NCBI RefSeq assembly: GCF_026571515.1
Contig: NW_026862419.1
Coordinates: 1 to 64,000 of the forward strand
Source: Ruditapes philippinarum
Taxonomy: Eukaryota
Reading direction: 5' to 3'
DNA length: 64,000 nt
Shown here in pieces: positions 4,060 to 40,212 of the stretch (the first letter of the stretch is position 1; each line of letters opens with the position of its first letter). A program made the position numbers and the translations under genes. A model generated the notes under the pieces. It ran no database searches. It was not told where the DNA came from and saw only the letters and a list, made by a program, of their open reading frames with translations.

Positions 4060-4185
4060 TGGAACAGAAAAGAACAGAACAGACTGAACATAGATGCGCA
4101 GAACAGAACAGAACAGAAGAAATCAAAACAGAACAAAATTGAATAGAGTAAAAAAGAATAAAATTGAATGAAAAAGAAAAGAATT
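4060..4185. repeat. Degenerate (GAACA)n pentamer / purine-rich simple repeat
   Basis: gaacagaaaagaacagaacagactgaaca...gaacagaacagaacagaaga. Confidence 0.75.
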
Positions 4186-4324
4186 TAGGGACTGTCAAAT
4201 AAATCATTCAAAATGTTAACTCGAAATAACAGGTTAAAGATTAAAAGAAAAATGTTCAAAATCAAATCAAATTAAGTATTAGCTTTTAAACTTATTTATC
4301 AATTTCCAGTCACGTTGCAATCAT

Positions 4325-4394
4325 ATGATAACAATTGTTATCATGTATATAAGATATAGATATAAATATATCTACATTTACCTCACAGTCATTT
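4325..4394 (+). promoter_or_regulatory. Putative core promoter of the poly-saposin gene: palindromic double GATA site, TATA box, Inr-like element
   Basis: Perfect 20 bp palindrome ATGATAACAATTGTTATCAT at 4325-4344. TATAAATA at 4361-4368. TCATTT at 4389-4394 places its A 30 nt after the TATA start. ATG at 4428. Confidence 0.5.
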
Positions 4395-4427
4395 TAATCA
4401 AGTGATTCTACTTCACTGTGTTTAAAA

Positions 4428-4470
4428 ATGCGGATTTTAATTTTAATATTGCTTGTTGGAATAACTATCG
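4428..4470 (+). CDS. Poly-saposin exon 1, signal peptide MRILILILLVGITIG
   Basis: ATG in aaaaATG context, hydrophobic core, phase-1 donor G|gtatgc that fits the next exon (GAPAVSEVGPCEVC). Confidence 0.8.
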
Positions 4471-7400
4471 GTATGCATTTTTGTATATTGACATTCATAT
4501 CATATTTGAATAAGTTTGAACGAGTCCATTCTTATTTATATAATAAAAAAAATGAAATAAAGTGACATTATGTCCATCCAAGTATACAAAGTCAGTGGAC
4601 ACTTATATATATATAATAGATTTTTAGCCGTAATGTAGTTCAATTTACTTTATGTATAACTATAAAAAAATCAATAATTCAATGTCACCAATGAAAATTG
4701 CTATAAATATCGCTAAATTCCTAAAAATAGTGGAGAAGTTGTTTGTTTTGTTTTTTTTTACTTTAGTAGTGTTTAAATTGTATCATACACATTTTGCATA
4801 ACCAATCATTGGTCAATCACCATTATACCAATCAATCTTTTAAAAAATTATATTACTGATTCATTTCAACTTGACAATGAAATAATGTACATAATGCCAC
4901 TTCAAAATATTAACATATATTTGAATAATGTGCTTATTTCTTTCACATTAAACAATGGTTTTAAAATATCCAGGAAGTATTTATTCACGAATAGATTTTT
5001 GGCATGTTTACAAATGAGGCAAATATATGTAATTATCGATTAAGCAATACTGGTTTATAGAGCATGGCTAATTAAAAAAAACACTCTCTGTTTCCACAAG
5101 TAAATATTAAGACACTGTTTTCATTAATTTTGTGACATTGAAAACGCTAATGATAAGAATAAATATATTATTGCCTTGCATAAGTTGTATAAGTATATGA
5201 TAAATGTAGATCTACACTTTTGTATGAAACAGGAGCCCCAGCAGTTTCTGAAGTCGGGCCATGTGAAGTGTGCCATTTACTAGTCGGGGAGGTCCAAGAC
5301 CTTCTAACAACACAACAAACACAGGTTCGTCGAACAATGCTATTTATAGATAGCCACAACATTTCTTCCTTAAATTTCCTGATTTCATGATTATTTACAG
5401 TAGTTTTGTATTAATCTTTTGGAATTAATGCATTTTGGAACTTTATAAAATCAACAAATATTGCCTGCTTGAAACAGGTTACTCTAAGTTTGTGATAGAA
5501 CTGGTCAACTTAAAATCTTTATCACCTACTGATCCACCATATATGCTTAAAGATTCAATATTTCAGAAAAAAACATTAAAGCAAAACCAACCGCATGCAC
5601 TTTTCGAGTAACCGGATTAATAACTTACAGATTTATAACTTTCTTACTGCGTTTGTGTAAAATAACCTTAAAATTATTTTCTTTTAAATTTACTCGATTT
5701 CCCCCAAAATAAATTAACTTTTACTGATAAGTTAAAAAGAGTATAGCTTGATATTTACTTGAATATTTCTTTGATGTCGGCAAGCAATTAGTTTTTTACT
5801 CATCATTCACAAATGCATATATCTAACAGGCTATCAGTAAAGGTCAGGGGTACAAGTATATGACTGTCTCTAGCGTTGATAGGCAAGATTATTTTACTCA
5901 AATCTTCACTAAAATAAACCTAGGATTAGTTGATATAGGTTAAAACTTAGATAAAATATCTTTCATGAATACGTGAAATAAAGAATGATGTCGATCTACA
6001 AAAACAGATAAACAAAGTCAGTATTGCGTATTATAATTTTTTTTTTCAAATTAAAATGCGTCTGATTTTTCGTCGTATAAAAATCAAACATTCAGGTTAT
6101 TTTATTCCAAATAATATAAGATATCAATTTCATCCAATTTGATCGAATTTTAATCACTTCTCAACCGATCATTTGCTTGTTTAACATTAAATATGATTTT
6201 GAACGTTTCTACATATACTTAACCTTGTATACTTAGGGGGAGTATAAAATTATTATCATGTTCCCCTCTTGTTCAATATTTGTTTTATTAAAGGGTTCGA
6301 TATCAAGCTATGTCAACGACGCTTGCGCAAAGCTACCATCAGAAGAAAAAGACGTCTGCAATAGCTTTCTGAAAGAACATTCAGGAAGTCTTTTCAACAA
6401 ACTGATAAAAGATCTGGTAAGTACATTGTATAATGTGTTGCAAAAATGTAACTGTCACAGTTACATGCTTTTAGCGGACGTTTTAATAACATTAAATTTT
6501 CTTATACAAGTCTGAAACTTTAATAAACTTTAATTTAAGGTTGGGGTATGACCGAGCGTTTGAAGTCTCGGGCAAAGCTCTTTTTTTACGGATTAAACTA
6601 TTGCTTTGGACCTTGTCAGTGCTGAGTCTTTGTTTTTTACCAAGAACTTTAGAAGCTTTTCTTTCGCATGATTGGCCTTAAACAATTTCTCTTTCATTTA
6701 ACTAAGCTAAGAATTATTGCGCGATTCTTATGAATCACAGCAGGCGTTCTACAACTGTACATTGTTCTTGATTTCCGCAAGATTTTGCATAAAATCAACG
6801 GCGTTCACATTTATGTTGGCAGTGTTTATAAAACATTGGTTTAAAACGTTCCTTATATATTGACACACGCTTTATAAACATGATATGAAATCTGTACGTT
6901 TTTCTCCCATATTAAGAGTGTACTAGTATAACTTCTCACGATCTTGATAATGATATTCTTGACATGTGAGAAGCGAATGTGTTGAGAATGTAACACTTTA
7001 CCATTGATCCATGCAGCCCATTTATGTTTTTATCAGTGAGTTCTTAATGTTGTAGACACCACACGAGTTTTGTCAAAGTCTGACAGACGTTTGTCCGTCA
7101 AATAATGAACAACCGGAACCGGAAGTTGAGCAAGAGGAAGAAACAGAAAATCCATCCGGCGTAAGTGTTAACAATTTACGTTGAATTATGAAACGCGCTT
7201 TATGTTGGATACTTTGCATATATACATTACAAATAATATATATTAAGAGCATTTAGCCTTTTATTAAGTTTTACACAGTAACATTTGCGCTGTTTCTTCC
7301 CGACACAAATGTGCATTTCAGATACAAAAACTGTTTATTTATTTATTATTAATGTTTTTATTTAATACTGTGTGATATAATGTTTCAAACCAAACAAAAA

Positions 7401-10400
7401 AATCTTAGACAATGATATGAATATTTTCTTACGTTTCATTATATATTTTGCATTTAATATAAAACACATGTTGATATATATTGTAGAACCCTCTAGAATG
7501 TGAGCTATGTAAACTGGCAGTTCTTGGTATTGACAAAATAATCAAACAGAACAGATCATCAGCAGCTATTAATGATACACTTGAAAAGTTCTGTAATGAT
7601 CTTCCTGATCAAATAAAAGATGTGGTCTGTACAATTATTTTTCCTACATTTTGTTAATATTAGCGTATAAGACGCACACGTGTATAAAACGCATATTCAA
7701 TTTAAATATTTATGTTATGAGAAAAATAACGGCGAATGAATGAAAACACTTTTCATGCAAATGAATCAAATTTAGTCTTGTGTTCTAGTGTATGTGTAAA
7801 TAACGCGAGATTATAGATCTTTATATGAAAGAACAACAACAACAACCAAAAAAGGAAAAGAGAAAAAACGATATATAACGTAAAAAACCTAGGTTACAGT
7901 CTGCGTGGAATAATATGTTTATGTTTTCCATTTTTGTAAAGAATGGACAGTTAGAAAGTTGAATATAATGTTTCAATAGATGCAGAAATATTTAATGTCT
8001 AAATATGTTATATCAGTGATTGACGTCAATATCCATATATTAATACGTATATACTTTCTTGCTGTTTTTTTAGTGTATTAAGATTGAACCCCTCATTCTA
8101 AAGGGACTTACAAATGGATTTGAACCTGGAGTTGTTTGCAAGTTTGCGACGCTGTGTTCACGTACGTATTTTTTTTTTCATTTTAAATGAGAAGCGTGAA
8201 AACCCTGAACTTGGCCTTTGATTGTGTCTCTTATCTGGATCAAAGTTAAAACTGGGTGAACATTGTATCAAAGATGATTTGATTTAAGATAAAATCACAA
8301 TGCCTTCTGATAACAGGCATAACTTTGCTCTTATGATGCAGAATAAACCATTGATATTCATATCAAAAGTGAAATTAAAACATGTACGCAGCACTTGCGA
8401 AAGTCATCGGACAAAGGTTCACAACACCTGACCTAATGTCAAATATGTACACACGCAATTCGAACAGGGGCGTTGACTTATTTGCGAAATAGTAATACGA
8501 TGACAGGTGATGATAAAATTTGTCAATATGTTTGAATTTGATTGGAAATCAATTGGAGCAATTTTACAATGAATAAAAAACCCTTTCGACTATCTTATTT
8601 TAAAGAAATAACTTTAAATATTTTATAAAGCAGAATGACTACTCTTTGACACATAGTGTAAATTAAGTCTTTCAGAACACAGGAAAACAAAAACAAAAAT
8701 CAATAAATATATGTTAACAAACAAAAAAAGAGCAGTCACTATACAGTCAATAACTATGAATAGTTGAAGCAGTATCAGTTATATTACATATGTTCACGTG
8801 TATATACGAGGGGTGTTCAAATATGAATGCAACTAGGCCAATATCTCGCTTTTAGCCACGTTTTGCACAAACTATGTACATGTATCACATAGTTGGTTGT
8901 GTAAGCGCTTGATTGATACAATAAATGTGTAAATCAGTTCAGTCTAGCTTTGACAATAGCTCGATTAACGCTATCCACTAGCATATACTAAAGCTTAAAT
9001 GGTTGGAAAAATGACCAAATACGGTCCTATATCAAAAACCGCTGCATTCTTGGTATACATGCGAAATACATATTTATTGAAATATTTCGTGTTTATGGGA
9101 ACAATGAACTTTTTTTTCCCATATGTCACACGATGGTGAAAGAAATTTAAAAATGGTGTGGATTCGGTAAAAGATGCACCTCTTGCACGTCGTCCGAAAA
9201 CTTCGCCAAATGTGGTTGAAAAGTAAAGGATTTGATTGCTACAGATGCAAGATTCACAACTAGGTATATAGTTAAATGTGTTGGTATCTGAAGCCGCTCA
9301 TACAATTCGATTTAAAAATGAGAAGGATAAGTACCAGATGGATACCCCATCTCCTTACAAAAGAGTAAAAAACTTGCTTGGGTAAGAATCTCCAAACAGT
9401 TCCATGAATACAACAATCGTTCTTTCGCAAACATCATCACTGGCAATGAGTTGTGGGTTCACTTTTATGAGCCAAAGCGAAAGATACATAACAAGATATC
9501 GGCAACCAAAAGAAGTCTAATACATTACATAGGAAAACGCACCATGAGCGTCAAAAATGTCATGTATGTAATTTACTTTACCAAATAAGGTCCTGCTATT
9601 CAAATTGCCGTACCAAAGGGTAAATATGTAAATGCCAAGTTTTGCAAAGGCAAGGTACTTCATAAATCAAAGAAATATTTCAAAAACCGTCGACCAGCAA
9701 CTGACGACCGAACGATAATATTTGAAAGACTAAATAGTTGTCGATATCCCCCAAATTCATTCAAAATATTTTGCCCCTTGAGACTTTTCCTATTTCCGAG
9801 TCTCAAAAAACACCTTGTCGGAAGAAAAATATCAAACGCGAAACAACCTCGGTTGGCTTTTTGTCAGTGTCTTAACTGTTTACCACAATTTTTTTTATAA
9901 AAACGCATTTTAAAGTTGGATTAAAATAATAAAACTTTGTATATCACATGGTGGTGAGTATTTTGAAGGATTGAAATAAATTATTTGACACTGTTTTGTT
10001 AAGGGCCACAATTTCTGGAAAATTGAAGTATGTCGCATATTGTTGGGTTTCAATATTTGAACACCCAACTTCGAACATGTGTCTTTGAAATTGTTTAAAA
10101 AAGGTTTATTTCCTTAAGATCAATATTATGTTGAGAATCAGATGACCACTTTCTTAGTGTATGTTATGATGATAAAAATGTTAAAAATCAAAAAGTCGAC
10201 CTTAAATCCAGATGATATTTATGTATATTTCTAGTGGATACATGAAGAAGCTTAGTGTCACTTAAATAAATCCAATGATGAACGTATGTATATTCGCTCA
10301 TGAAACGTCTAGGGGTCAAGCTGTATTAGGGTACCATGCATTTTGATAGTTTATATTCGGTATATTAGTACTCTCAAGTATCATAACATTTTAAGATCAA

Positions 10401-13400
10401 ATACAGATTATGGATAGTATTTCAACTAAAACAGAATGAACAAACATTTATTTTTAAATGTATAAGATTAGGCCTGATATTTGATATAGAAATCAGCACT
10501 TCACAAACGCCAAATTTCATCTTATCAGTAATTGCGCTTTAAGATATGGCACCGAATTTTCATTTGTTAGAAGCATGCATTTAATAATGATATATTATTG
10601 CACATAAATTATAGTTTCAATGGATAAAAGCAACACGAAAAAGATATGTATACAAATTTTCTTGGTTATTTTTCAATGCCGTGGAATTTGGTTCATTACA
10701 AATAATATTTAAAATATCTTTTTTGCAGGACAGTGAAAGTATTTGTGCTTCACAGAAATCTTGCTTAAAAGAATCTGAATTACAACGAAAACAGGAATCT
10801 GAATCTAAACCGGAAGTTAAAGTATGTGATATGTCAAACGTCTAGAATTTATCTTTGTATTAGTATACATGTAAATAACTTGTTATGTTATTTATGAAAG
10901 CATCTTTCTTCCTTCCATTTAAGAATCCTTTAGCTTGGAGAAATTAGGCTAAATCCAAGTCAGTGCGCGTACATACTTTAAATAAGGTAAACAGGTTATA
11001 CTTGCAAACAAAAGGAAATGATTGATACTACGTTAATGAGGATAAAACAACGTTTCAATAAACTTTTTATGGTAGTGAAGTCTAGTGATCAAACAAAGTA
11101 CAAGTAAAATCATTCTTCGAGCTCTTTCAAGGCAAACAAAAAAAAACGCTCTTTATGCCTTCCTTAGTTTGGAAAGATAAATTGTCCTACGTTATGCGTT
11201 GTTCTAACTGTCAGACATAGTTATAAATCACTTTGTCTTTTAAATTACGTATCCACGTAGTTATAATTGTTGCGAAAAAAATTGTAAATTTAAAAATGAA
11301 AATTTGGTAAATTTTTTACCTATAATTTAATATTTTAGTCTTTTTAAAAAAATTAAAAATTAAAAAGGCCCCACGTTTTGGAATGTCATTTTTTGGGTAA
11401 GTTTCCCTTTGAAAGAGTTTGATTTTTTAATTGTTTGGAAAAAAAACCGATCTTCGCCGCCACCCATTAATTAGGAAATTTTTGGAAAACAGTCTAACCT
11501 TTGGGGAAAAACTGAAAGACCCCTTTTAACGTAGATTGGTTTTTTTGGGACCAAAATTTTCCCATTTAAGTTGCGGCAAAAAAAATCCCAAATTTTTCAA
11601 GTTTCCCAGCAAACTTAAAAACCCTTTTTTAAGTTGCAAAAAAAATTATACTTATGGTAAGTTGCAACAAAATAAACCCATTTTAAGTTGCAGCAAAATA
11701 TACCCTTTTTAAGTTGCAGCCAAATATACCCGATTTTACCAAAGACTAAAAAGATATGGATATCATTTTATTACAATATTCTCTTTAAATAAGTAAGCGT
11801 AACACAATGTCCAAAATAAGTAAGCGTAACACAATGTCCAAAATATAATTATAAATGTTACTATAATAGACTTCTTTTAGATTTCAAAGGAAAGAAATGG
11901 ATAATCAATGAACTATATACCAAAAAACGATAATTTACAAAGAGGCTTTTCATTGTTGTATGACTAACTATTTGCCAAATAAAATGTTAATTGTATTTGT
12001 AATTAACTCTCCGGTCAAGCATTGTTATGTTTCACTTATTTATTATTACACTTATTATTGATTAACTTATTATGGTTGATACAGCTTTTCAGCAAGGCTA
12101 TTTACATTTACTTTATATATAAAGCACTATGTGATCAATACCTGCAATAAGTTATTAAATATAATTATAATTTATATATAAGCTTCTCCTCCTTTGCCTG
12201 GCTAGACAGAAGCGCTAAATTATTTACATACAAATATTTGTCTGTTTTCCAATTTTTCAAGGCAGTTGGTATTTTAATAACTCACTTATTAATTTATCTA
12301 TTACATATGTTAAATATTTGTCTTTATTTCAATTTTAACTAACATCACTTCCAGAAATAAGTTTTAATGTTTTGGGAGTTATCTGTGACCTTTTTTCAAT
12401 GATTTATTTAACCATTTCAAGTCCAAGGATGAACATTATCTAAAATAACTTACAGATACATTTTAATATTATAATCATTATTAGATTGACCGTCCTATAA
12501 TTTCAGTGTTTAAACGTTGAGCCAGATATTCTTAAAGCAATACTTGGTGGAATAGATCCAACCAAAGCTTGTGATTTTCTGAAACTCTGTAATGATGGTA
12601 AGAAGCTGTTCTTAATTTTGTTTTCTCTGTTCATTTAGTGACAATTTCAATCAGCTTTATTTACATAATAAGTATCCATATAAGTTAAATCGTTACGCCG
12701 TACACAATTTAAAAACACTATAATTGTAAAATTCTGAGAGAATATTTTAAAAATGTCTCCTATCTGGTATTGCGCTCCTTGTGGTAATTGGTGATGCACC
12801 GTTTGAGTCAATCTACTGCATTTTATCTTTATATTCAGATCTATCCCGTTACTAACAGTTACTGTATATTTTGACGTGCAATTGAAGATGATCTCAGTAG
12901 TTAGCCACTGTCATAAACTAACATAATACAAAAATGTATATCACTTTACCTGCAGAGGTTTCTAAATTCAACATTTCACCATTTTCATGTTTAAATGAGC
13001 CAGCGCTAAAAGAAGTGGGTGTAACTTGCATTTTACAGTACCGTCCATGAACAGGCTTAATCAAACCGAGCCTGCAGCATGTTCAATATCGTCGTTTGGG
13101 GCGTTCTTTAGGAATTCCGTTCCTATATTCTATGTAGTACAATAAATAAAAATAAAATTATTTTCACAGAGCATGACATGGAAATAACTTGTTGCTTTAT
13201 GAGGAATAAAAAAAGCTATTCGGAATGAATGGTATATATAGTAAAATAATACAAAAGACAACAGAATGTAAAACTGTTCTAATTAATTTTTTTTTTAAAT
13301 TTCAAAGGTGGAAAAGTTCCAATCAGTTCACAATACATCCCATGCGACGTCTGCAAGGAAACATTGGAGTCCATGGCAGGAGAGGTAAATTAAGAGAGAC

Positions 13401-31400: not shown

Positions 31401-34400
31401 GCTGGAATCTCGCCATACGGTCTTTACAGTGTTGGTTTACATTGGTCATTTAAGAATATAACATATATGTTATAGTAGTCGTAGATTCGTTTACCTATTT
31501 TTAATTTTGTTCATTTTATTCAATATAACATTTAATTAACACGAATATTTATATATATATTTATAAATTATTACAAGTATACTTAGTTTAACGTGAGTGA
31601 AATTTGGTATGCTTGAAAAAAGCAATGTAAACTGCATGCGCTTTGTTGCAATTAAACACAACACTACTTATACATAATACGTCATTATACATGATGTTAT
31701 TTTATTCTATATTCTAAAGCTCCAGTCCAAAAGGAAAGTGCAAATGACAATGTTGGAGATATAAAATGTGACATTTGCGAATTGATCATAAAAGAAATTG
31801 ACACTATTGTTGGACAGAATGCATCCGCAGAAAAAATTAATGCCACTATCTACAACTTATGTAGTCAGCTACCAGGAACCGCTGCAAAATATGTATGTTT
31901 ACGCTATTCATTGCATTTTTTTTCTTTTGATATACACATAACTTACAAGATATATTGTTTAAACCAATGATTCGGCACCTGTTCTAAAAATATTTTTTAT
32001 TACCTAAAACAGTCTGTCATAAGCATTTTCGAAATATTAACATATGTACTTCACAGAAAAAAGCATAATAATAAATAGATTAAATCTCAATGAATATATT
32101 AATAACTAAAGATTGTGTTACAATGGTCATATTTTAGTGTGTAAAGGTGGCGCCTACAATTGTCAAGGCAGTAGAGTCGGGTGTAGATCCGCAGTCGGCA
32201 TGTACAGCTCTTAAACTTTGTGACAGTTCAGGTAAATATTATCAACAATTATATATATATCCTTTACTGGCACAATGAACAAAATGTATTTCAACGGTTC
32301 TTTGAATTACATATTATAATGAAACCTGCCTTGTAAAGAATTAATTAGTTCAAACACTATGTGACAGCTCGGTATGTATTGCTTATAATTAATATTTAAT
32401 ATATCTTTAATAATGTGAACAATAAACACAATTGAACAGAATGCGTTTGTATAAGATGATAAAATAAAATATTTGTCGGGAAGTAGTAATTCAATTTCTG
32501 CTTTTGAAATAAAAGCAGGCTTTTACATTAAATTTTTCAGATATTTTCATTGAAATATACACACATTAATGCAAACTATCACGTTGTTTGACTTTTATTC
32601 GACATGTATAATTTCAATTCAAGGGATGAAAAGCGTGTTTAATTGATACAACTTCTAATGGTACATTTTACCGTTAGCATTTTATAAGGATAACCACACA
32701 CTATAACCATTTATCTCCCATTTAATATTGATCTGTCTAGCATGGCAATTCGAAAATGGATGTTATAGTTTAAATACATCTATATCAGTATTATTACAGA
32801 CTTGATTACAAAGACAGTGTTTTCCACTTACAAAAACCTTAACTTTGTGACTTCATATTGGAAGTGCAACCAAGTTTGCTAATGGATGGTCGATGGTTCT
32901 CATTAGGTGTCCAATCGTGCCTTAAATATGTTCTGAGGGGCACCTGATATCGGCCTCCACCAATTAAGCTGGAATCTCGCCATATGGTCTTTACAGTGTT
33001 GGTTTACATTGGTCATTTAAGAATATAACATATATGTTATAGTATTCATAGATTCGTTTAACTATTTTCATTTTGTTTCATGTTATCCACTATAACATTT
33101 AATTAACATGAATATTTATATCAAATAACTTATGACAACTATACTAAGTTTAACGTCAGTGAAATTTGGGATGCTTGAAACAAACAATGTAAACTGCATG
33201 CGCTTTATTGCAATTAAACACAACACTACTTATACATAATACGTCATTATACATGATGTTATTTTATTCTACATTCTAAAGCTCCAGTCCAAGAGGAAAG
33301 TGCAAATGACAATGTTGGTGATATAAAATGTGACATTTGCGAATTGATCATAAAAGAAATTGACACTATTGTTGGACAGAATGCATCCGCAGAGAAAATC
33401 AATGCCACTATCTACAACTTATGTAGTCAGCTACCGGGAACCGCTGCAAAATATGTATGTTTTACGCTATTCTTGTACAAAAAGTCATTTTATAAACACA
33501 TTACTGACTAGATATATTGTTTAAACCAATGATTCGACACCTGTACTAAAATATTTTTTATTAACCTAAAACAGTCTGTCATAAGCATTTTCGAAACATT
33601 TACATTTGTACTTCACAGAAATAAGCATAATCATAAACAGATTAACTCTTAATAACTAAAGATTGTGTTACAATGGTCATATTTTAGTGTGTAAAGGTGG
33701 CGCCGACAATTGTCAAGGCAGTAGAGTCAGGGGTAGATCCGCAGTCAGCATGTACAGCTCTTAAACTTTGTGACAGTTCAGGTAAATATTATCAACAATT
33801 TATATATATATATCCTTAACTGGCACAATGAACAAAATGTATTTCAACGGTTCTTTGAATTAATCAAGCAATAATGTCTTTACAAGGCAGGTTTCATTAT
33901 CTGCACTGGCAATTTAAACACGTACATTATTGTTCAAATATCTAGAATATAATATAGAACGGAAATACTTGTTCGGATGCCTACATTGAACATATAGACA
34001 CATTTTTAAATTCACGAAATTACCCGTGTAAATTTATCATTTTGTATTTATTTGCGTAGTCGGTCAAAGTACTAGTCCTAATGACGTAGGAGACATCAAA
34101 TGTGACATTTGTGAGTTGATCATTAAAGAGCTCGACACTATTGTTGGACAGAATGCATCTGCAGACAAGATTAATGCCACCATCTACAATTTGTGCAGTC
34201 AACTGCCTGGAACTGCTGCAAAATATGTAAACATTTACTAATAATGACATTTTCATAGCGTCGCGATCTACAGGTTCTATTTAAGTTCATTGGTACTCAT
34301 TAAGTCAATCTTGTTCGTAAATTAAATATTATATTCAAAATATAACCTGTCGTTTGTTAAAGTGTTATCATTTACTTTCTTCAACAACATTTCGACTGGT

Positions 34401-37400
34401 CATTAATATTGACACTGTTACACTCAAAAGAGCGTTTATTTTTTAATTTATTATAAATTGCAAATAATTTTTTTAGTGTGTAAAGGTCGCACCAACTATT
34501 ATTAATGCTATAGAAGCCGGAGTAGATCCACTGGTCATTAATATTGACACTGTTACACTCAAAAGAGCGTTTATTTTTTAATTTATTATAAATTGCAAAT
34601 AATTTTTTAGTGTGTAAAGGTCGCACCAACTATTATTAATGCTATAAAAGCCGGAGTAGATCCACAGGCGGCCTGTTCAGCTCTAAATCTTTGTGCCAGT
34701 TCAGGTAAATTTTTTATGCAATAGTTCTCGAATGTGTTTTAAAAATCAATCAAGGAATATTTTTAGTTTATCTTAACATTAAATGATTCAATGTATTCTT
34801 ATAACGGATAAATTAAACATATTTTTTTAAGATGGTAACTCTTTTGCATTTAATCATGTTCTTAGCATTTACACAATATTTATGTTAAAATTTATATGGC
34901 TAATTTGTTTAATTATCAATAACAGATAAAGTGGTACAAATTTCCAAAGATGTAAGGGACATCAAATGTGATATTTGTGAGTTGATCATTAAAGAGGTCG
35001 ACACTATTGTTGGACAGAATACATCTGCAGAAAAGATTAATGCAACCATCTACAATTTGTGCAGTCAACTGCCTGGAACTGCTGCAAAATATGTAAACAT
35101 TTATCAGTAGTAACATTTGCATAGTGAGGCGAGCTCATTTAGATAATTCCGTTCGTAAATTGAATATTAAATTCAAAATATAACTTGTCGAACACATTTT
35201 CATATCGCGGCAATATACAGGCTTTTTTAAAAAATAAAATTCAACTTATTCGGGTAATCCTGTTCGCATATAAAATACTTGTATAATAATCCAAAATATA
35301 TCTTGTCTAAGCACGAAGTATTATCATTTACGTATACTTTCTTTAACAAGATCAATATTGAAACTGTTAGAATATCTACTCAAAATTAACATTATAATAT
35401 GTTGCAAATAACATAATATTTCAGTGTGTAATGGTTGCACCAACTATTATAAAGGCTATAGAAGCCGGAGTAGATCCACAGGCGGCCTGTACAGCTCTAA
35501 ATCTTTGTGCCAGCTCAGGTAAATGTTTTAGTACAATATTCCTGGGATATGTTTTTATTGTAACAACCAAGTAAGAAATTATTATCAGTTAATATTTAAC
35601 ATTAGATAATTCAATAAAAACTTATTACGGGACACTTTCAAACATATTTTGGAATGGAAAATCTTTTACATTTGAAACATGTTCCTAACATTTAGAAAGT
35701 AATAATATGTAATAACTCTATATGGCTAATTTGTTTAATTATTAATAACAGCAAAAGTGGTACGAATCTCTAATGATGTAGGGGACATCAAATGTGATAT
35801 TTGCGAGTTGATAATACGGGAACTGGATAATATTGTTGGAAACAATGCCTCTGCAGACAAAATCAATGCCACTATCTATAATTTATGTAGCCAGTTACCA
35901 GGAACCGCAGCAAAATATGTAAGTTTCCTGTTTTGTGAAATGTTTTTTTATACACATGTATATCAACATTTGTAGACTGTATAACGTATATGTTACACGT
36001 TAACCTCTTTATTCATGATATGAAACGGTATTTTGCAATAGAGCCAAAACAGCCAAAACCAGAAAAAAAGAAAATGCACTGAAAGCTAAACCTGCATACA
36101 TTTACATTTATTAAGAATTGTCCTAAATAAAGCATGATTTCTGGTTTTATTATAATCATTTCTACTGTTATGAATAAGAACCCAAAGGGTGAGATCACGA
36201 CAGATACAGTCAAAGTCCCCCTAACATGGCATAATCAGTATTAAATATTTAAAAAAAACTTTGAATTATCATTAACAAATGTAAAACGCTGATTATACAA
36301 ACCCATTTGATCAAGAGATAATAGTTTATATACTCTCTTTAACATTGTCTCATTTTAAAAGAACTATTTTACAGTGTCAAATGGTTGCACCTACCATTGT
36401 GAAAGAAATCGAGGGCGGGGTTGATCCAGAGACAGCATGTACAGTTTTGAAACTTTGTGATGCATCAGGTAGGGTTTGACATCATAAAAATGAGTTTAAT
36501 TAAAGTATTTAGACACTTTTTGAAACTTTAGGTAGTGTTTGACATCATTACAATTAATCTTTTTAAGTCAAAGCACATGGTACTTTTTTAAACGAACATT
36601 TATGACATTTATAAGAATGCTTTGTGCAAACAAATCGACTTTTGATAATAGACATACTTATATAGTCCAAACACACAGAACTAAGTCCAGTATAATGTGC
36701 TGTTAAAAAGGCACTATTTGTTTGCTTGGTAGTAAGATGAGGTGTATTTTATAGAGTGAACATCAGTTATAATTATTTGTGTAGCGAGGCATCAGATCAT
36801 TTCCACGAGTATAATATTTTTTTGTTGTTGTAATTAAAACAAACAAATGTTCTATAAATTGCGTGCTCTTTCAAGTGTTGTTATCATCATTGTTCGCCGA
36901 TTTTTACCGCGTAAAATCACGCGCTCATATTCAACACGTCAAGAAATGACGTCGAAAATGCACATCATTTTGTGAAATAACTTGATTTTATAATGCAAAT
37001 CTTATCAGCATATAGTTAACCTTAAAATTTATGTAAACGATGGAGTTCATATTTGCTAAATTGTATATTCATTATAGTTCTGACCGGTTCCTAATTGTTG
37101 TGTTTCTGTGTTCATTGTGTTGAGATGGACATATCGGTCACCTTAGTGCAGTAACGTAATATGTTTTTCTAAATTCAATAGGAGTTAATCAGTTATTGCA
37201 CTAAGGTGACGATATATCGTAGCATTTTAAGAATCATATTTCTGATATTTAAATGATTTATTTGTTAGAAACACGCAATAACGTTGGAGATATCAAATGC
37301 GAGATTTGTGAGCTTGCAGTTCGTAAGCTGGACGAGTTGATTGGACAGAATGCATCAAAAGATAAAATAAATTCAACGATGTATCAGATATGTAATGACC

Positions 37401-40163
37401 TCTCTGGAACATCTAAAATATATGTAAGCATGCTCTAACTTAAGCCTTTTCTTGAAAAATGTTTGCTTTGCATAACACCCGTAAGAACATACATGTGATT
37501 CCTGCAAGTGACACCAAAGCTTGACTCTTACATCCCAATAATTTCTTTTGGCATGAAACTTTAAATGATATCCGCGAACTTCAAGCTGCTACAGTACTGC
37601 TAATAGTTATTTTCATAGGGTTGTTATTTGTAAATCAGATTTCAAAAACTGTATTATTTCTATTCGAGATAAAACTTTACTCATGTACGTCAATATAGCA
37701 AAAAACTATTATGCTACCTTTGTTGATGTTTTATTGTCATTATTTAAGTATCAAGACATTATGTGAAATACAGTACATTTCTTATTCATATTTAGTGTTT
37801 GCTGCTTGCTCCAGCAATTGTCAAAGAGGTAGAAGCAGGGGCAGATCCAAATGAAGCATGCAAAGATCTCAAACTCTGTACAGGTAGTGCTCTCCCCCAA
37901 CCTTGTAAAAATACACTTAGTGAAAAATATACCTTTATTATGTACCTTTAATTTACAATCTCTATAGCAAATTCACACTTTATTATAATATGTGTATGTT
38001 CCGAGAGAATACTTCCCAATTAAGAAATAAAAATTATCTCTTTTACTCTGTATGTAAAGATCAAGTATACATATATATGATAGATCTGCTTGCAAACTTT
38101 GGTTGAATGATTAAACTATACAAGCTTCTTACATTAAACCTAAATACACATGAACATACTTACTCCAAATGCTTTTTACAGCATACATGAGTGAAATATT
38201 TAACCCAATTCCAAAATTGTTCAACTCAATGCTTGTCGATATCATTATTTTTATTAATACCATCAATAGCAATAATAATTTTCAACACAGTTGTAAGATT
38301 GAATTCCGTCCGGCCAGAGGCTTAGAAATCTCTATTATTTTTGGAAGATATCAGGCTAGGTGATTCGAACAGCTTATAAACTTGGAAAACATGATGCCCG
38401 GTATATATGCAGTAAAATTCCTAGATAACATCGACGCCGCCATGTTACAGTGTAACTTTCTACATCCGTTTGAATAAGTCACTGCCTATAAACATAAAAA
38501 TAAATCTGACTCAAATATTTCCAGCTAAAACCCCTTGTTGTAAAACGTTCTTGGTTTGATCCTGAGGGCTAAGGTGAAGGAAATAATTAAGTGTTGACGA
38601 CTGATGTAAGAGAATTAAAATAATACTGGTTTTAACATATTTATATTCATGATACATACACTTGTTGATAATATACACATTAAAGCATAAAGGAATTGAA
38701 CCTAGAGCTGGAACAGTTCATGGTAGTTCTCTCCTTTCAAAAATAATCAGTTCAAAAGCAAACATTTCAATATATCACAAAAAGCATAGGGCTGGACAGA
38801 GAGAATAATGACTTTCTATGTTTTGTGTTACTTTTGTATTCAAGAGTGTTGACATAAAATATATATATAGAACTGTGCATTTAATATGTTTAAAGTTGTC
38901 GAATATCTTTTTATTAAGGCACGTCTCCTGGCAATGTCAATGTTCATCTAGAAGCAAGAAATGGGCCATTAGATTGTGGCTTGTGTATGCAATCTCTGAC
39001 AGCCGTTTTCGACAATCTATCAAGTGATTATGTAAGTCAAATTAACTTCACTAAAATTAGTTTTGTTTGTTTGTTTGTTTGATTGGGTTTTACGTCACAC
39101 CGACACAGTATAGGTCATATGACGACGTTCCAGCATTACTGGTGGAGGAAGGCCTCAGAACCACCGACGTTCCGTAAGCTAGCTGAATAGCTTCCCCACA
39201 TGTAAGAATCCAAAGTCCAAAAACCGGTCGGGATCAGAACCCTCAGCGGTGAGGGGCAAGTGGTTTGAAGTCAATGACTTCAACCACTCGGCCACGGTCG
39301 CCCACACTTAAATTAGAAGCTCGCGAATATTTCTACACGTACAGTATATGAAACATATTAATTGACATATATTTCATGCCAAAAGAATAATTTCTTGCTT
39401 TAATTGTGTATTTTGAAGTGTCATTTTAAGATTGTGCATAACCTTGAAGAGCTTGATAATATAATTTTATAACAATTATTTACGTTGTAGTGTAAAACGA
39501 TGACGGTACAAAATAAGGGTACCACAGTTATGTACTTTTTCGTAACAGAACTGTTTTGTTGTCGATAATGTGTCATGCAGTCCGACAGCTTGTGTTAACT
39601 TAACAGCATTGGTAAAATAAAATTGTGAGGAAACATTTAATATTGCTTAAAGGAATATCATATTTACTCGTAATAAAGGTACCAAATGAATTGTCTAATA
39701 ATTTACTTTACCCAGGTATGTGTTTCATTTACATAAAAGTAACGTTGTAAAATTTATGAAATGAACATTTTTATTAACTTTTCAGGTGAAAGTTGAAAGG
39801 ACGCTTCTTCACGTTTGCAGCTCATTACCAGAAATATTCAAGAAACCGGTAAACTTGCACATTCCTTTCTATTCAGAAGATTCTATAATGAAAGACATAA
39901 TAATAAAAGAAAGCCGTAACAAAGCACATCATTCTTCTAACAATCTTAAGACAATGGACCTTTCAATATCTATCTCAACTGTTTCATAACTGTTTGTTTA
40001 CGTTATTTATTTATTTATTTTACTTTTTTTTCAGTGTGAAACCCTTGTGAAAAGTGATAATGGAAAGGCTTTTAAAAAGGTGATGAGACGGTACACGCCG
40101 GTATCCTTATGTGAACTAGCAAACTGCCGGGAGAACGTAGGTTGGAGGTTGGGCAATAATTGA
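4428..40163 (+). CDS. Giant multi-exon secreted poly-saposin-B (saposin-like protein, SAPLIP) gene; at least 47 coding exons, ~5.15 kb CDS
   Basis: Chain of GT-AG bounded exons with compatible phases from ATG 4428 to TGA 40161-40163, with one phase break between 8161 and 10729. Repeated CxxC...C...C...P..CxxxxxC saposin-B pattern. AATAAA at 40207 and 40542. Confidence 0.9.
5233..7160 (+). CDS. Saposin-B domain 1 plus acidic linker (exons 5233-5324, 6294-6416, 7056-7160)
   Basis: CEVCHLLVGEVQDLLTTQQTQ|GSISSYVNDACAKLPSEEKDVCNSFLKEHSGSLFNKLIKDL|TPHEFCQSLTDVCPSNNEQPEPEVEQEEETENPSG; six Cys; AG/GT ends. Confidence 0.88.
7487..8161 (+). CDS. Saposin-B domain 2 (exons 7487-7624, 8074-8161)
   Basis: NPLECELCKLAVLGIDKIIKQNRSSAAINDTLEKFCNDLPDQIKDV|CIKIEPLILKGLTNGFEPGVVCKFATLCS. 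Confidence 0.9.
8807..10073 (+). mobile_element. Decayed Tc1/mariner (mariner-like) DNA transposon in a poly-saposin intron, ~1.27 kb
   Basis: Left end TA|CGAGGGGTGTTCAAATAT and right end ATATTTGAACACCC..TTCG. Frameshifted transposase remnants RWIPHLLT (WVPHEL motif), IITGNELWVHFYEPK (IVTGDE motif), YPPNS...FAP*DF (YSPDLAP motif) and terminal GGEYFE. Confidence 0.9.
10729..10821 (+). CDS. Poly-saposin exon: C-terminal part of a shortened saposin-like module plus linker
   Basis: ttttgcag|DSESICASQKSCLKESELQRKQESESKPEVK|gtatgt; CxxxxxC motif; 93 nt, phase 0-0. Confidence 0.7.
12507..12597 (+). CDS. Saposin-B domain 3, C-terminal half only (partner exon not found)
   Basis: tttcag|CLNVEPDILKAILGGIDPTKACDFLKLCND|gtaaga, clearly homologous to the other second-half exons. 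Confidence 0.85.
13308..14227 (+). CDS. Four-Cys mini-saposin module plus acidic linker (exons 13308-13384, 14093-14227)
   Basis: GGKVPISSQYIPCDVCKETLESMAGE|IGIGICYQFKDVCGYEETQTEMHENLKLIPKIDYTLDEEESENLK; phases 1-0-0 fit both neighbours. Confidence 0.8.
14590..14710 (+). mobile_element. 3' fragment of the tRNA-derived SINE family seen at 42308
   Basis: gtggttcta..caggtgcc...ggcacctaaggtcttcct...gccatatg...gtcggtgcaacgtaaaa matches the 42.3 kb copy. Confidence 0.7.
15021..15888 (+). CDS. Saposin-B domain 4 (exons 15021-15158, 15801-15888)
   Basis: EDAKCEICKYIIQLLNEAVGTNASIAQVNNTLFEICSYLPDNIKSL|CPLFIPSLEKALADGLDPTNTCIASNFCQ. Confidence 0.9.
15960..16880. mobile_element. Two apparently nested hairpin-bearing non-autonomous elements (outer from ~15960, inner ~16266-16628)
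   Basis: Both begin AGAGGATATT and open with a long imperfect inverted repeat (~15968-16083 and 16266-16417). No ORF. Family assignment (possibly Crypton-like) is uncertain. Confidence 0.55.
17094..17704 (+). CDS. Shortened five-Cys saposin-like module plus linker with furin site RHRR (exons 17094-17185, 17537-17704)
   Basis: KTESAFVSIEDLKCTVCAQIVETLPGVESFR|KSLSFDNNNNLTCMLDQVKNGICNNVCHNRHRRSADTESSLLYQAEDAMKSAKSGL. Confidence 0.82.
18974..20939 (+). CDS. Saposin-B domain 5 and linker mini-exons (18974-19117, 19781-19883, 20365-20399, 20892-20939)
   Basis: KGLAECEICKVFIRSLDGLAGENASIETVNNTVYEICTRLTGIQLQQA|CLQKAPELTVILKKGLDPEKTCVSAKFCTEHEHE|VKIQKRAVHEEE|ESILMKAIREKERHNV. Confidence 0.85.
22098..24338 (+). 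CDS. Saposin-B domain 6 and linker exons (22098-22238, 23038-23131, 23740-23804, 24282-24338)
   Basis: GDVACDLCEGVIEILDNLLEDNATDEKINQTLYNLCSGLPSGAFQDL|CMQIVPTIMTAVDNGFDPQTICTDVGLCTGR|SKVGSRLPLRKKHMPEKSVNEN|EESILLDTIVARRMAQQSV. Confidence 0.9.
22420..22718 (+). mobile_element. Diverged tRNA-derived SINE (second family)
   Basis: tRNA-like head with B box GGTTCGATTCC (~22473-22483), a body, and an A/AC-rich tail (aactaccaacaaaaaacaagcaac). Confidence 0.6.
24761..26399 (+). CDS. Saposin-B domain 7 and linker exons (24761-24901, 25471-25564, 25936-25997, 26343-26399); duplicate of the domain 6 module
   Basis: GGIACDLCEGVIEILDNLLEENATDEKINQTLYNLCSGLPSGAFQDL|CMQIIPTIMTAVENGFDPETVCTAAGLCTGK|SKMRSMTLEKKHLHDENINNN|EESTLLDTNVGKENTQRNL. 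Confidence 0.9.
27047..28036 (+). CDS. Saposin-B domain 8 (exons 27047-27184, 27908-28036)
   Basis: KDLKCEVCKAVIEELDSLVKQNASIEKINETLYDVCNQLPGALQDL|CLQAAPQILNALMNGVDPSEACGSLGLCSSEAGITDTTEKSFD. Confidence 0.92.
28318..28971 (+). CDS. Saposin-B domain 9 (exons 28318-28461, 28878-28971)
   Basis: NVEDVKCEICTLLVQGLDEILRGNASVAQINATIFNLCGDLPGSAKSF|CVMVAPVIVKELQGGADPKVACAVLKLCASK. Confidence 0.92.
30375..33781 (+). CDS. Saposin-B domains 10-12, near-identical repeats (exons 30375-30547, 30744-30837; 31720-31892, 32138-32231; 33282-33454, 33688-33781)
   Basis: APVQEESAKDNVGDIKCDICELIIKEIDTIVGQNASAEKINATIYNLCSQLPGTAAKY|CVMVAPTIVKAVESGVDPQSACTVLKLCDNS and two close variants; 173+94 nt exon pairs. Confidence 0.92.
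30813..33861 (+). repeat. Recent ~1.5 kb tandem duplication (~30813-32308 copied as ~32348-33861), including intron sequence and a SINE fragment
   Basis: Introns align at high identity, e.g. 31130-31480 versus 32695-33045. An exon-end remnant (ctatgtgacagctcggtat) sits at ~32357-32375. Confidence 0.9.
34060..36468 (+). CDS. Saposin-B domains 13-15 (exons 34060-34226, 34611-34704; 34926-35092, 35425-35518; 35752-35918, 36375-36468)
   Basis: 167+94 nt exon pairs; DIKCDICELII(K/R)E.D.IVG.N(A/T)SA(D/E)KINATIYNLCSQLPGTAAKY|C..VAPTI......GVDP..AC..L.LC. Confidence 0.92.
34395..34663 (+). repeat. Near-perfect ~135 bp tandem duplication spanning a splice acceptor and the first ~54 nt of an exon
   Basis: actggtcattaatattgac...ggagtagatcc occurs at 34395-34529 and 34530-34663, differing by one substitution and one T. 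Confidence 0.9.
37131..37215. repeat. Small inverted repeat (mini-MITE-like)
   Basis: atatcggtcaccttagtgcagtaac ... gttattgcactaaggtgacgatat. Confidence 0.65.
37269..37883 (+). CDS. Saposin-B domain 16 (exons 37269-37423, 37796-37883)
   Basis: ETRNNVGDIKCEICELAVRKLDELIGQNASKDKINSTMYQICNDLSGTSKIY|CLLLAPAIVKEVEAGADPNEACKDLKLCT. Confidence 0.92.
38919..40163 (+). CDS. Terminal saposin-B domain 17 and stop (exons 38919-39031, 39786-39848, 40035-40163)
   Basis: GTSPGNVNVHLEARNGPLDCGLCMQSLTAVFDNLSSDY|VKVERTLLHVCSSLPEIFKKP|CETLVKSDNGKAFKKVMRRYTPVSLCELANCRENVGWRLGNN*. Confidence 0.88.
39060..39303 (-). mobile_element. tRNA-derived SINE, same family as 42308, with an internal deletion
   Basis: The reverse complement reads gggcgaccgtggccgagtggttgaagtcattgacttcaaaccacttgcccctcaccgct... 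and ends in an (AAAC)n tail. Confidence 0.88.
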
Positions 40164-40206
40164 TCATAGAAACTAACGTTATTGATAAAATATCAAGACA
40201 TAAAAC

Positions 40207-40212
40207 AATAAA
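40207..40212 (+). terminator. Candidate polyadenylation signal of the poly-saposin gene (alternative at 40542-40547)
   Basis: AATAAA about 44 nt after the stop; weak evidence in AT-rich DNA. Confidence 0.35.

What the first reader, a model, noticed from the sequence alone, without database searches (positions are those of the whole stretch)
4428..40163. Giant secreted poly-saposin: 16 complete SapB domains plus a half domain and three shortened modules in one ~1,700+ aa precursor
Seen: 47 phase-compatible exons (about 5,150 nt summed by hand) give a signal peptide followed by about 20 saposin-type modules. Known: vertebrate prosaposin has 4 SapB domains flanked by SapA domains, and NK-lysin/amoebapore-type proteins have one. 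I see no SapA motif at either end, so this is not canonical prosaposin. Inference: a lineage-specific, still-expanding multivalent lipid- or membrane-binding polyprotein (lipid digestion, antimicrobial defence or mucus/surfactant role). This is the best candidate for an undescribed system in this window.
Basis: partly seen in the sequence, partly recalled or inferred. Interest (0 to 1): 0.88.

Follow-up and report, generated by a model that had tools for sequence, protein, structure and literature searches.

The report
Giant secreted poly-saposin gene of a bivalve
This is a real, expressed mollusc gene that strings about 20 saposin-type lipid-binding modules behind one signal peptide. Similar and larger unstudied genes are already in the databases for many molluscs, and this assembled copy lacks two exons near its 5' end.

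Summary
The observation largely holds. On the + strand, 4428-40163 carries one signal-peptide exon followed by 16 complete six-cysteine SapB domains, one orphan SapB C-terminal half, and three short four-cysteine modules, one of them only half present. There is no SapA.

RNA contigs from two studies join exons 1-6 with GT..AG introns and run on for up to 670 nt. Their next exon is not intact in this window or anywhere in this genome assembly. The Mya arenaria ortholog shows that a second exon is missing too. So the claimed unbroken chain of 47 exons is not confirmed. A 45-exon chain that skips 10729 and 12507 is open: 4,914 nt, 1,637 aa.

The gene is not the canonical prosaposin. SapA hits lie only on another contig.

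It belongs to a SapA-less poly-saposin family found in bivalves, limpets and abalone with 7-12 domains. Its closest relative is Mya arenaria 'SAP-like protein'. SapA-bearing giants with 22-27 domains exist in Aplysia, Elysia and Physella, and a 23-repeat giant exists in the tunicate Styela. All are uncharacterised database entries.

Module runs were amplified separately in each species.

The likely role is a glycosylated precursor, cut at a conserved RHRR site and in its linkers into saposin-like lipid- or membrane-binding proteins. The function is inferred, not tested.

Verdict: a new member of a known kind, of moderate interest.

The parts
4361..4366 (+). TATAAA, promoter-like box about 58 nt upstream of the first transcribed base seen
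   Evidence: the RNA contig starts at 4419 straight after adapter letters
4419..4470 (+). Exon 1: short 5' UTR, ATG at 4428, signal peptide MRILILILLVGITIG (phase 0>1)
   Evidence: RNA joint 4470|5233 GT..AG, X4 contig depth 161; translation
5233..5324 (+). Exon 2: domain M1, C1-x2-C2 part (1>0)
   Evidence: RNA joints; SapB_1 E 5e-5
6294..6416 (+). Exon 3: M1, C3..C4 part (0>0)
   Evidence: RNA joints in X1 and X4; 55% identical to Mya P0020 197-236
7056..7160 (+). Exon 4: M1, C5..C6 plus acidic linker (0>0)
   Evidence: RNA joints
7487..7624 (+). Exon 5: M2 exon A (SapB_1 half)
   Evidence: RNA joints; SapB_1 E 1e-7; 79% identical to Mya
8074..8161 (+). Exon 6: M2 exon B (SapB_2 half), ends in phase 1
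   Evidence: RNA joint 7624|8074; contigs continue beyond 8161 with letters not in the window
8700..10100 (.). Repeat or transposon-like stretch inside the long intron
   Evidence: Reads on both strands with many loose ends, unrelated to the exons; no Pfam hit on the one stretch tried
10235..10284 (+). Decayed look-alike of the transcripts' exon 7 (first half of mini-module 3). It follows an AG and has 3 indels and an in-frame TGA.
   Evidence: Best local alignment of both RNA 30-mers, score 31 against a next best of 22
10729..10821 (+). Exon: second half (C..C plus linker) of four-Cys mini-module 3 (0>0).
   Evidence: Colinear with Mya P0020 382-416; in frame with everything downstream
12507..12597 (+). 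Orphan exon B (SapB_2 half) of module 4. Its exon A is missing here (0>1).
   Evidence: SapB_2 hit; profile E 2e-16 and no exon-A-type sequence in 8162-13300; Mya has the exon A
13308..13384 (+). Mini-module 5, first half, IPCDVC (1>0)
   Evidence: 52% identical to Mya 495-521
14093..14227 (+). Mini-module 5, second half (C..C) plus acidic linker (0>0)
15021..15158 (+). M6 exon A
   Evidence: SapB_1 E 6e-6
15801..15888 (+). M6 exon B (0>1)
   Evidence: Alignment A2; the one exon B without a Pfam hit on its own
17094..17185 (+). Mini-module 7, first half, KCTVC (1>0)
   Evidence: counterparts in bivalve relatives
17588..17704 (+). Mini-module 7, second half, with furin-type site CHNRHRR|S
   Evidence: R-x-R/K-R-S at the same place in Mya, Mizuhopecten, Potamilus, Mytilus and Saccostrea
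18974..19117 (+). M8 exon A
   Evidence: SapB_1; 63% identical to Mya 783-828
19781..19883 (+). M8 exon B (0>1)
   Evidence: SapB_2
20365..20399 (+). Linker exon L1 of M8 (KIQKRAVHEEE, 1>0), predicted
   Evidence: Phase need and splice scores
20892..20939 (+). Linker exon L2 of M8 (0>0), predicted, weakest of the set
   Evidence: resembles the L2 exons of M9 and M10
22098..22238 (+). M9 exon A
23038..23131 (+). M9 exon B (0>1)
23740..23804 (+). M9 linker exon L1 (1>0), predicted
   Evidence: Homologous to 25936-25997
24282..24338 (+). M9 linker exon L2 (0>0), predicted
24761..24901 (+). M10 exon A
25471..25564 (+). M10 exon B (0>1)
25936..25997 (+). M10 linker exon L1 (1>0), predicted
26343..26399 (+). 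M10 linker exon L2 (0>0), predicted
27047..27184 (+). M11 exon A
   Evidence: 1:1 partner of Mya P0020_859 in the tree
27908..28036 (+). M11 exon B plus linker (0>0)
28318..28461 (+). M12 exon A
28878..28971 (+). M12 exon B (0>1)
30375..30547 (+). M13 exon A (1>0)
   Evidence: SapB_1 E 9e-9
30744..30837 (+). M13 exon B (0>1)
   Evidence: SapB_2 E 3e-5
31720..31892 (+). M14 exon A
32138..32231 (+). M14 exon B
33282..33454 (+). M15 exon A
33688..33781 (+). M15 exon B
34060..34226 (+). M16 exon A
   Evidence: near-identical ORF P0099 on a JGI metagenome contig
34477..34533 (+). Pseudo-exon: duplicated 5' part of M16 exon B, made by a 135-bp x2 tandem repeat at 34401-34669
34611..34704 (+). M16 exon B
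34926..35092 (+). M17 exon A
35425..35518 (+). M17 exon B
35752..35918 (+). M18 exon A
36375..36468 (+). M18 exon B
37269..37423 (+). M19 exon A
37796..37883 (+). M19 exon B (0>1)
38919..39031 (+). Last domain M20, C1-x2-C2 part (1>0)
39786..39848 (+). M20 middle exon (C3, SSLPEIFKKP; 0>0)
   Evidence: matches the '..C..LP.P...' piece of the last domain of relatives
40035..40163 (+). M20 last exon (C4, C5, C6) and stop codon at 40161-40163
40207..40230 (+). AATAAA and ATTAAA polyadenylation signals 44-62 nt after the stop

Best explanation
One gene on the + strand (promoter near 4361, ATG 4428, stop 40161-40163) encodes a secreted-pathway precursor of about 1,640-1,750 aa. It has a signal peptide, no SapA domain, 16 complete saposin B-type domains and short four-cysteine saposin-derived modules. 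It is the ortholog of Mya arenaria 'SAP-like protein' and belongs to a SapA-less poly-saposin family of bivalves, limpets and abalone. The canonical prosaposin-type gene lies elsewhere in the genome.

Proposed mechanism:
1. The precursor enters the ER.
2. Each domain forms three disulfides and is N-glycosylated at up to two conserved sequons.
3. A proprotein convertase cuts the conserved RHRR|S site after the second mini-module.
4. Endolysosomal or digestive proteases cut the linkers.
5. The products are many saposin-like glycoproteins of about 80 aa that bind and loosen membrane lipids, most plausibly in the endolysosomal and digestive system.

Shown: exon structure of the 5' part, splicing, signal peptide, domain identity, orthology, and species-specific amplification of modules M9-M10 and M13-M18.

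Inferred: a single full-length mRNA, processing, glycosylation, location and lipid function.

In this assembled haplotype, the first half of mini-module 3 and exon A of module 4 are missing or decayed. The reading frame survives only if exons 10729 and 12507 are skipped.
For: - RNA contigs from two studies join exons 1-6 with GT..AG introns and continue 163 and 670 nt further. Adapter letters sit before 4419.
- RNA runs hold 7-14% of the words of 30300-40200, where my exons make up about 22%.
- 14 of 14 exon A peptides hit SapB_1 and 14 of 15 exon B peptides hit SapB_2.
- The 45-exon chain is open: 4,914 nt, 1,637 aa, 104 Cys, 29 N-x-S/T, all introns GT-AG.
- Only one signal-peptide-type first exon was found. 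TATAAA lies upstream and AATAAA follows the stop.
- The gene is colinear with Mya P0020, at 55-79% identity in the N-terminal exons.
- Relatives carry only SapB_1/SapB_2.
- SapA hits lie only on contig C13600. 11 of the 14 SapB_1 hits in the genome lie in this window.
- The R-x-R/K-R-S site sits at the same place in six bivalve relatives.
- N33 and N40 sequons are invariant across the 14 exon A peptides.
- The tree gives 1:1 pairs with Mya for M2 and M11, and window-only clades for M9/10 and M13-18.
Against: - No read or contig was laid on 10300-40163, so a single mRNA over the whole array is not shown.
- The exon that transcripts use after exon 6 is not intact in the window or in the assembly.
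- Exon A of module 4 is absent. This copy may therefore be a broken or structurally variant allele, or a local misassembly.
- Linker exons L1 and L2 and the last-domain exons are predictions only.
- The C-terminal-half linkers carry no dibasic sites.
- Nothing here tests processing, glycosylation, location or lipid binding.
- Raw RNA reads of two other runs gave almost no exon coverage. Expression is therefore tissue- or sample-specific, and the tissue is unknown.
Confidence: 0.72

Rival explanations
1. The released domains act mainly as membrane-permeabilising antimicrobial effectors, like amoebapores, naegleriapores, caenopores and NK-lysin. They would kill ingested or invading microbes rather than act as cofactors of lipid hydrolases. 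Gene structure and processing would be the same; only the target differs.
For: - Multi-SAPLIP precursors cut into antimicrobial peptides are documented in Naegleria, Dictyostelium and C. elegans (PMC11542183).
- The genome keeps a separate SapA-bearing prosaposin-type locus that could cover the housekeeping lysosomal role.
- Module number changes fast and independently in each species, and modules differ between individuals. That pattern is common in immune and digestive effectors.
Against: - No activity data exist.
- The domains are acidic to neutral and N-glycosylated, like lysosomal saposins. Many pore-forming SAPLIPs are cationic (the comparison is from general knowledge).
- No infection-response expression data were examined.
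Confidence: 0.3
2. In this genome the locus is not one working gene. The assembled allele is broken between exon 6 and 13308 by a frameshift with two lost exons. Alternatively the array is transcribed as two or more units, as the Mya annotation draws it.
For: - Exon 6 ends in phase 1 and has no intact 1>0 partner before 10729.
- The look-alike at 10235 carries a TGA and indels.
- Exon A of module 4 is absent.
- The Mya locus is annotated as four adjacent models, WAQ97103-97106.
Against: - Exon 6 to 13308 is in phase and gives an open 1,637-aa frame.
- All downstream exons are intact and conserved, with no stop in 4,509 nt.
- No other signal-peptide-type first exon was found.
- The RNA contigs run 670 nt past exon 6.
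- Split models are a usual annotation artefact in repeated exons.
Confidence: 0.15
3. The protein works uncut, as a large secreted multivalent lipid-binding glycoprotein. It would resemble secreted prosaposin (SGP-1) or a lipid carrier in mucus, the crystalline style or hemolymph.
For: - It has a signal peptide and no SapA or sortilin-type C-terminal motif.
- The C-terminal half has short linkers without dibasic sites.
- UniProt names the scallop relative 'Sulfated glycoprotein 1', but only by similarity.
Against: - The conserved furin-type site argues for at least one cut.
- All studied multi-saposin precursors are processed (PMC5483003, PMC11542183).
- No proteomic data exist.
Confidence: 0.12

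Closest known systems
Mya arenaria 'SAP-like protein' WAQ97106.1 with neighbours WAQ97105-97103 (uncharacterised gene models)
   Same: The exon-by-exon order is colinear: first three-exon-type domain, M2, four-Cys mini modules, furin-type site, canonical modules. N-terminal exons are 55-79% identical and the C-terminal module type 60-72%. There is no SapA.
   Different: - Mya has the first half of mini-module 3, exon A of module 4 and one extra module after mini-module 5. All three are absent here.
- The run of near-identical modules arose separately in each species.
- The Mya locus is split into four models.
SapA-less poly-saposins of other molluscs: Mizuhopecten OWF36411/XP_021340615, Potamilus KAK3608183, Mytilus trossulus XP_063444046, Saccostrea XP_061195678, Patella XP_055954933, Haliotis XP_067671257, Lottia XP_009060097
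   Same: - A signal peptide, then only SapB_1/SapB_2 domains in the four bivalves and Patella. Haliotis and Lottia were not scanned with Pfam.
- Two sequons per domain ('N.S..AINAT').
- Four-Cys mini modules, R-x-R-R-S after the second mini module, and a divergent last domain in the four bivalves.
   Different: They have 7-12 SapB_1 repeats and 900-1,420 aa, against 16 complete domains here. Identity is only 35-55%. None has been studied functionally, as far as my library searches show.
Vertebrate prosaposin (PSAP, sulfated glycoprotein 1) and Drosophila Sap-r
   Same: A signal peptide and tandem SapB domains (4 in human, 8 in fly) with three disulfides and N-glycans. The precursor is cut in linkers into lipid-binding saposins (PMC5483003).
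   Different: - Prosaposin and Sap-r carry SapA domains, and prosaposin uses a sortilin-binding end. This gene has none.
- It has 16 or more domains plus four-Cys modules.
- A separate SapA-bearing locus exists in the same genome.
Giant SapA-bearing poly-saposins of heterobranch gastropods (Aplysia XP_035826565, 2,813 aa; Elysia GFR60011; Physella XP_059176048) and the tunicate Styela XP_077973904 (3,236 aa)
   Same: One precursor carries 22-27 tandem SapB domains, including runs of near-identical copies.
   Different: - They have an N-terminal SapA (Aplysia 25.5 bits).
- Their domains are of the longer classical type, about 80 aa and often with no split visible at protein level.
- They are only distant relatives of the window's modules.
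Protist and nematode multi-SAPLIP precursors (naegleriapore, Dictyostelium AplE/AplK, caenopores)
   Same: Several saposin-like domains sit in one secreted precursor and are released by proteolysis. They have no SapA (PMC11542183).
   Different: They have two to a few domains and an antimicrobial pore-forming role shown by assay. There is no detectable specific kinship beyond the SapB fold.

Membership tests
Saposin B-type domain (SAPLIP; Pfam SapB_1 PF05184 + SapB_2 PF03489) | Sequence match to both half-domain profiles | tested here: met
   SapB_1 hits 14 of 14 exon A peptides (best E 1.6e-9). SapB_2 hits 14 of 15 exon B peptides (best E 4e-7). M1 exon 2 matches SapB_1 at E 5e-5. The M20 exons give no hit on their own.
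Saposin B-type domain (SAPLIP) | Six cysteines spaced C-x2-C ... C-x10-C ... C-x4-6-C | tested here: met
   C16, C19 and C47 are invariant in A1; C1, C22 and C28 are invariant in A2. M1 and M20 spacing was counted. The three mini modules have only four Cys.
Saposin B-type domain (SAPLIP) | Four- to five-helix bundle fold | not tested
   A whole domain spans two exons. The joined sequence has no reference, so I did not fold it.
Canonical prosaposin (PSAP / Sap-r type) | SapA domains (PF02199) flanking the SapB array | tested here: not met
   No SapA hit on any exon. The whole-genome SapA search hits only contig C13600.
Canonical prosaposin (PSAP / Sap-r type) | The single prosaposin-type gene of the genome | tested here: not met
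   A second locus has SapA plus SapB_1 hits at C13600, about 301-359 kb, minus strand.
Canonical prosaposin (PSAP / Sap-r type) | Proteolytic release of single saposins in lysosomes, which activate sphingolipid hydrolases | not testable with these tools
   Needs proteomics and enzyme assays.
Molluscan SapA-less poly-saposin family (Mya SAP-like, Mizuhopecten OWF36411 and others) | Colinear architecture: signal peptide, three-exon-type first domain, canonical modules, four-Cys mini modules, R-x-R/K-R-S after the second mini module, divergent last domain | tested here: met
   Colinear tblastn with Mya P0020. The same motifs can be read in P0007, P0011, P0012, P0013 and P0018. Starred 1:1 module pairs with Mya for M2 and M11. 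In this assembly two exons of the pattern are missing.
Antimicrobial pore-forming SAPLIPs (amoebapore / NK-lysin type) | Membrane permeabilisation by the mature single domain | not testable with these tools
   Needs liposome leakage and killing assays.

The most novel reading that the evidence does not exclude
The SapA-less poly-saposins of molluscs form a distinct, so far unstudied effector system, separate from prosaposin. It would be a digestive or antimicrobial polyprotein with three defining traits. Its module number is amplified independently in each species. It varies between individuals by presence or absence of exons. It combines classical six-Cys saposins with four-Cys 'mini-saposins' and one conserved convertase site. 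This window would hold the largest bivalve member seen so far.
Probability: 0.3. Interest if true: 0.55.

Novelty: new member of a known kind. Interest (0 to 1): 0.4.

Why it matters
- Saposins are the classic lipid-handling cofactors of lysosomes, and their relatives are innate-immune pore formers.
- Molluscs keep, beside a prosaposin-type gene, a second SapA-less gene with 7-16 or more saposin domains that nobody has studied.
- That second gene would be a natural place to ask how filter feeders digest membranes of algae and bacteria, or defend the gut.
- The per-species amplification and the exon differences between individuals also make it a clean example of domain-number evolution by exon-cassette duplication.
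- For genome annotation, the case shows that such loci are routinely split (Mya) or left unnamed.

Tried and rejected
- **Searching for the transcripts' next exon.** The exact 19-mer with up to 3 mismatches, a 14-mer, and all 10-13-mers gave nothing in the window except the look-alike at 10235. In the whole assembly there was one hit (contig C6795). It looks like chance: the reversed control pattern gave as many hits, and the flanks are not saposin-like.
- **Looking for a second copy or haplotig of exons 3-6 in the assembly.** Only the window itself was found.
- **ORF 8437-8532 (CQIC...) as exon 7.** Rejected. It has a poor acceptor (-3.5) and a stop just upstream, its phase does not fit at the good donor, and the RNA contigs do not use it.
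- **My ad hoc exon-chaining script.** It inserted spurious micro-exons even in the RNA-validated part. I used it only for leads, and curated linkers by phase and by homology between units.
- **Raw-read RNA runs X21 and X23.** They gave almost no exon coverage, so they say nothing on splicing.
- **Pfam on single exons of the mini modules and the last domain.** No hits.
- **Pfam on the transposase-like stretch 9340-9567.** No hit.
- **Four literature searches.** They found no paper on mollusc poly-saposins.
- **What was left out.** The joined spliced protein was not sent to any search, fold or atlas tool. Exons were searched one by one by reference. Joining was done only inside scripts, to check frame, length and motif counts.

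Full report
**What is in the sequence**

The window is AT-rich (about 31% G+C) with no N runs. The + strand between 4398 and 40160 holds a regular series of short open frames of two kinds:
- an 'A' type, '..C-x2-C....N-A-S....I-N-A-T....C..LPG..';
- a 'B' type, 'C..VAP.I......G.DP...C...KLC'.

All 14 A peptides hit Pfam SapB_1 (best E 1.6e-9). 14 of 15 B peptides hit SapB_2 (best E 4e-7). The three cysteines of each half and two N-x-S/T sequons are invariant. One A exon plus one B exon therefore makes one six-cysteine saposin B domain.

**Transcript evidence**

I laid four runs on 4300-10299. Contigs from two runs of different studies (X4, 1,283 nt, depth 161; X1, 597 nt, depth 301) are spliced. 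They join these exons across GT..AG introns:

4419-4470 | 5233-5324 | 6294-6416 | 7056-7160 | 7487-7624 | 8074-8161

- Sequencing-adapter letters precede 4419. The 5' end is therefore close, and TATAAA sits at 4361.
- ATG 4428 opens MRILILILLVGITIG/APAV, a typical signal peptide.
- The spliced joints show that these 'RNA?' runs hold cDNA.
- Fifteen runs listed as RNA, two on record and thirteen guessed, from seven studies hold 7-14% of the sampled words of 30300-40200. My exons make up about 22% of that stretch, so most 3' exons are probably present in RNA assemblies. I could not lay reads there because the cap is one call.
- Two raw-read RNA runs gave almost no exon coverage. Expression is therefore sample-specific.

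**Gene model**

Phases, splice sites, homology between units and the Mya ortholog give 47 exons:

| Part | Exons |
|---|---|
| Signal peptide | exon 1 |
| M1 | 3 exons |
| M2 | 2 exons |
| Mini-module 3, second half only | 10729-10821 |
| Module 4, orphan exon B | 12507-12597 |
| Mini-module 5 | 13308-13384, 14093-14227 |
| M6 | 2 exons |
| Mini-module 7, with CHNRHRR\|S | 17094-17185, 17588-17704 |
| M8, M9, M10 | 4 exons each: A, B and two small linker exons |
| M11, M12 | 2 exons each |
| M13-M19 | seven two-exon cassettes, phase 1 to 1 |
| M20, last domain | 38919-39031, 39786-39848, 40035-40163 |

- AATAAA and ATTAAA follow the stop by 44-62 nt.
- My screen found no other first exon that looks like a signal peptide in 8162-38900.

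**The gap in the chain**

- Exon 6 ends in phase 1 and exon 10729 begins in phase 0.
- The RNA contigs continue after 8161 with 'TGGAGAATGAAGAAGCGGTTTCACAGATAC' (X4). X1 has a variant that differs at 4 of the first 12 letters. This reads ..LENEEAVSQI...
- This exon is not in the window and not in the 1.41-Gb assembly. The single 2-mismatch hit looks like chance.
- The best local alignment of both variants falls at 10235-10268. That place lies directly after an AG and 494 nt upstream of exon 10729, but it has three indels and an in-frame TGA.
- No other acceptable 1>0 exon exists in 8162-10728.
- The Mya arenaria ortholog (P0020, WAQ97106) is colinear with the window. At this place it has the CxxC half of a four-Cys mini module. 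Before the counterpart of 12507 it has a full exon A.
- A profile of the 14 A peptides finds nothing in 8162-13300, while the B profile finds 12507 at E 2e-16.
- The intron also carries a repeat-like insert at about 8.7-10.1 kb.

So this assembled haplotype lacks two exons that the species' transcripts, or its nearest relative, have. Frame arithmetic:
- Exons 1-6 joined directly to 13308..40163 (45 exons) give 4,914 nt and 1,637 aa, with no stop and all introns GT-AG.
- 10729..40163 alone is also open, at 1,502 aa.
- All 47 exons sum to 5,098 nt, one frame off, and would need the missing 3n+2 exon.

Whether the sequenced animal skips the two orphan exons, carries a null allele, or was locally misassembled cannot be told here.

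**What family it is**

A profile of the A peptides, searched against 1.84 billion proteins, found 872 hits.

- The closest named relatives are Mya arenaria 'SAP-like protein' and three adjacent fragment models.
- Next come SapA-less proteins with 7-12 repeats from Mizuhopecten (named 'Sulfated glycoprotein 1' by similarity), Potamilus, Mytilus trossulus, Saccostrea, Patella, Haliotis, Lottia and Gigantopelta.
- Pfam finds only SapB_1/SapB_2 in the five relatives scanned and in Mya.
- The bivalve relatives share the four-Cys mini modules, an R-x-R/K-R-S site after the second mini module, and a divergent last domain.
- Larger poly-saposins exist in Aplysia (2,813 aa; 26 SapB_1 repeats and an N-terminal SapA), Elysia, Physella and the tunicate Styela (3,236 aa).
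- No same-species protein is in the library apart from a 75-aa ORF on a metagenome contig (P0099).
- In this genome SapA hits lie only on contig C13600, beside two more SapB_1 hits. 11 of the 14 SapB_1 hits in the genome lie in this window.

The gene is thus not the prosaposin ortholog but a second, SapA-less family.

**Evolution of the array**

- In a tree of 78 A-type half-domains (short alignment, weak backbone), M2 and M11 pair 1:1 with Mya modules with strong support, and M8 pairs weakly.
- M13-M18 (94/94) and M9/M10 (100/100) are window-only clades.
- Every species has its own run of near-identical modules.
- Units M13, M14 and M15 are about 90% identical over the stretches that align. 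These cover most of M13 and M14, introns included, and 96% over an exon-A stretch. M9 and M10 share 96% in the exon and little else.
- A 135-bp tandem duplication made a pseudo-exon at 34477-34533.

The amplification is lineage-specific but not demonstrably ongoing.

**Mechanism**

Shown:
- signal peptide;
- splicing of the 5' part;
- SapB identity;
- conserved sequons;
- a conserved furin-type site.

Inferred from what is known of prosaposin, Drosophila Sap-r (eight SapB domains, PMC5483003) and protist multi-SAPLIP precursors (PMC11542183):
- ER entry, disulfide formation and glycosylation;
- one convertase cut;
- linker cleavage into single saposin-like proteins that bind or perturb membranes.

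A hydrolase-cofactor role and an antimicrobial role cannot be separated here.

**Literature and rules**

- Four full-text searches found no paper on these mollusc proteins.
- The spliced model was searched exon by exon, by reference. The joined protein was not sent to any search or folding tool. Joining was done only in scripts, for frame and motif counts.

**Verdict**

It is a new and large member of a catalogued but unstudied molluscan family, with an interesting structural defect or variant in this assembly.

Noticed in passing
window 1370-2620 (-): Intronless 416-aa ORF with Glyco_transf_7N (E 4e-42) and Glyco_transf_7C (E 1e-23). It is a beta-1,4-galactosyltransferase-like gene, divergent from and about 1.8 kb upstream of the saposin gene's start.
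   Followed up: partly
window 8700-10100: Repeat-like stretch inside the long intron. RNA reads lie on both strands with many loose ends. One frame reads '..ITGNELWVHFYEPKRK..', which recalls mariner-type transposases, but Pfam gave no hit.
   Followed up: partly
window 8514: An X4 contig matches the window only from 8514 onward and has 255 unlike letters before it. This may be a structural-variant or repeat boundary between individuals, close to where the exons are missing.
   Followed up: no
window 34401-34669: A 135-bp unit repeated twice (97% identical) duplicates the intron end and the first 57 nt of M16 exon B. This makes a truncated pseudo-exon at 34477-34533.
   Followed up: partly
G000 contig C13600, about 301,400-359,300 (-); loci L003, L004: The genome's only SapA hits (55 and 37 bits) lie here, with SapB_1 hits at 303,129 and 307,611. 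This is probably the canonical prosaposin-type gene of this species.
   Followed up: partly
window 7101-7124 and the exon after 8161 (transcripts): Transcripts of other individuals differ from the window by a 6-nt deletion at 7111 in the acidic linker. They also differ from each other at 4 of the first 12 letters of the next exon. The linkers are highly polymorphic.
   Followed up: no
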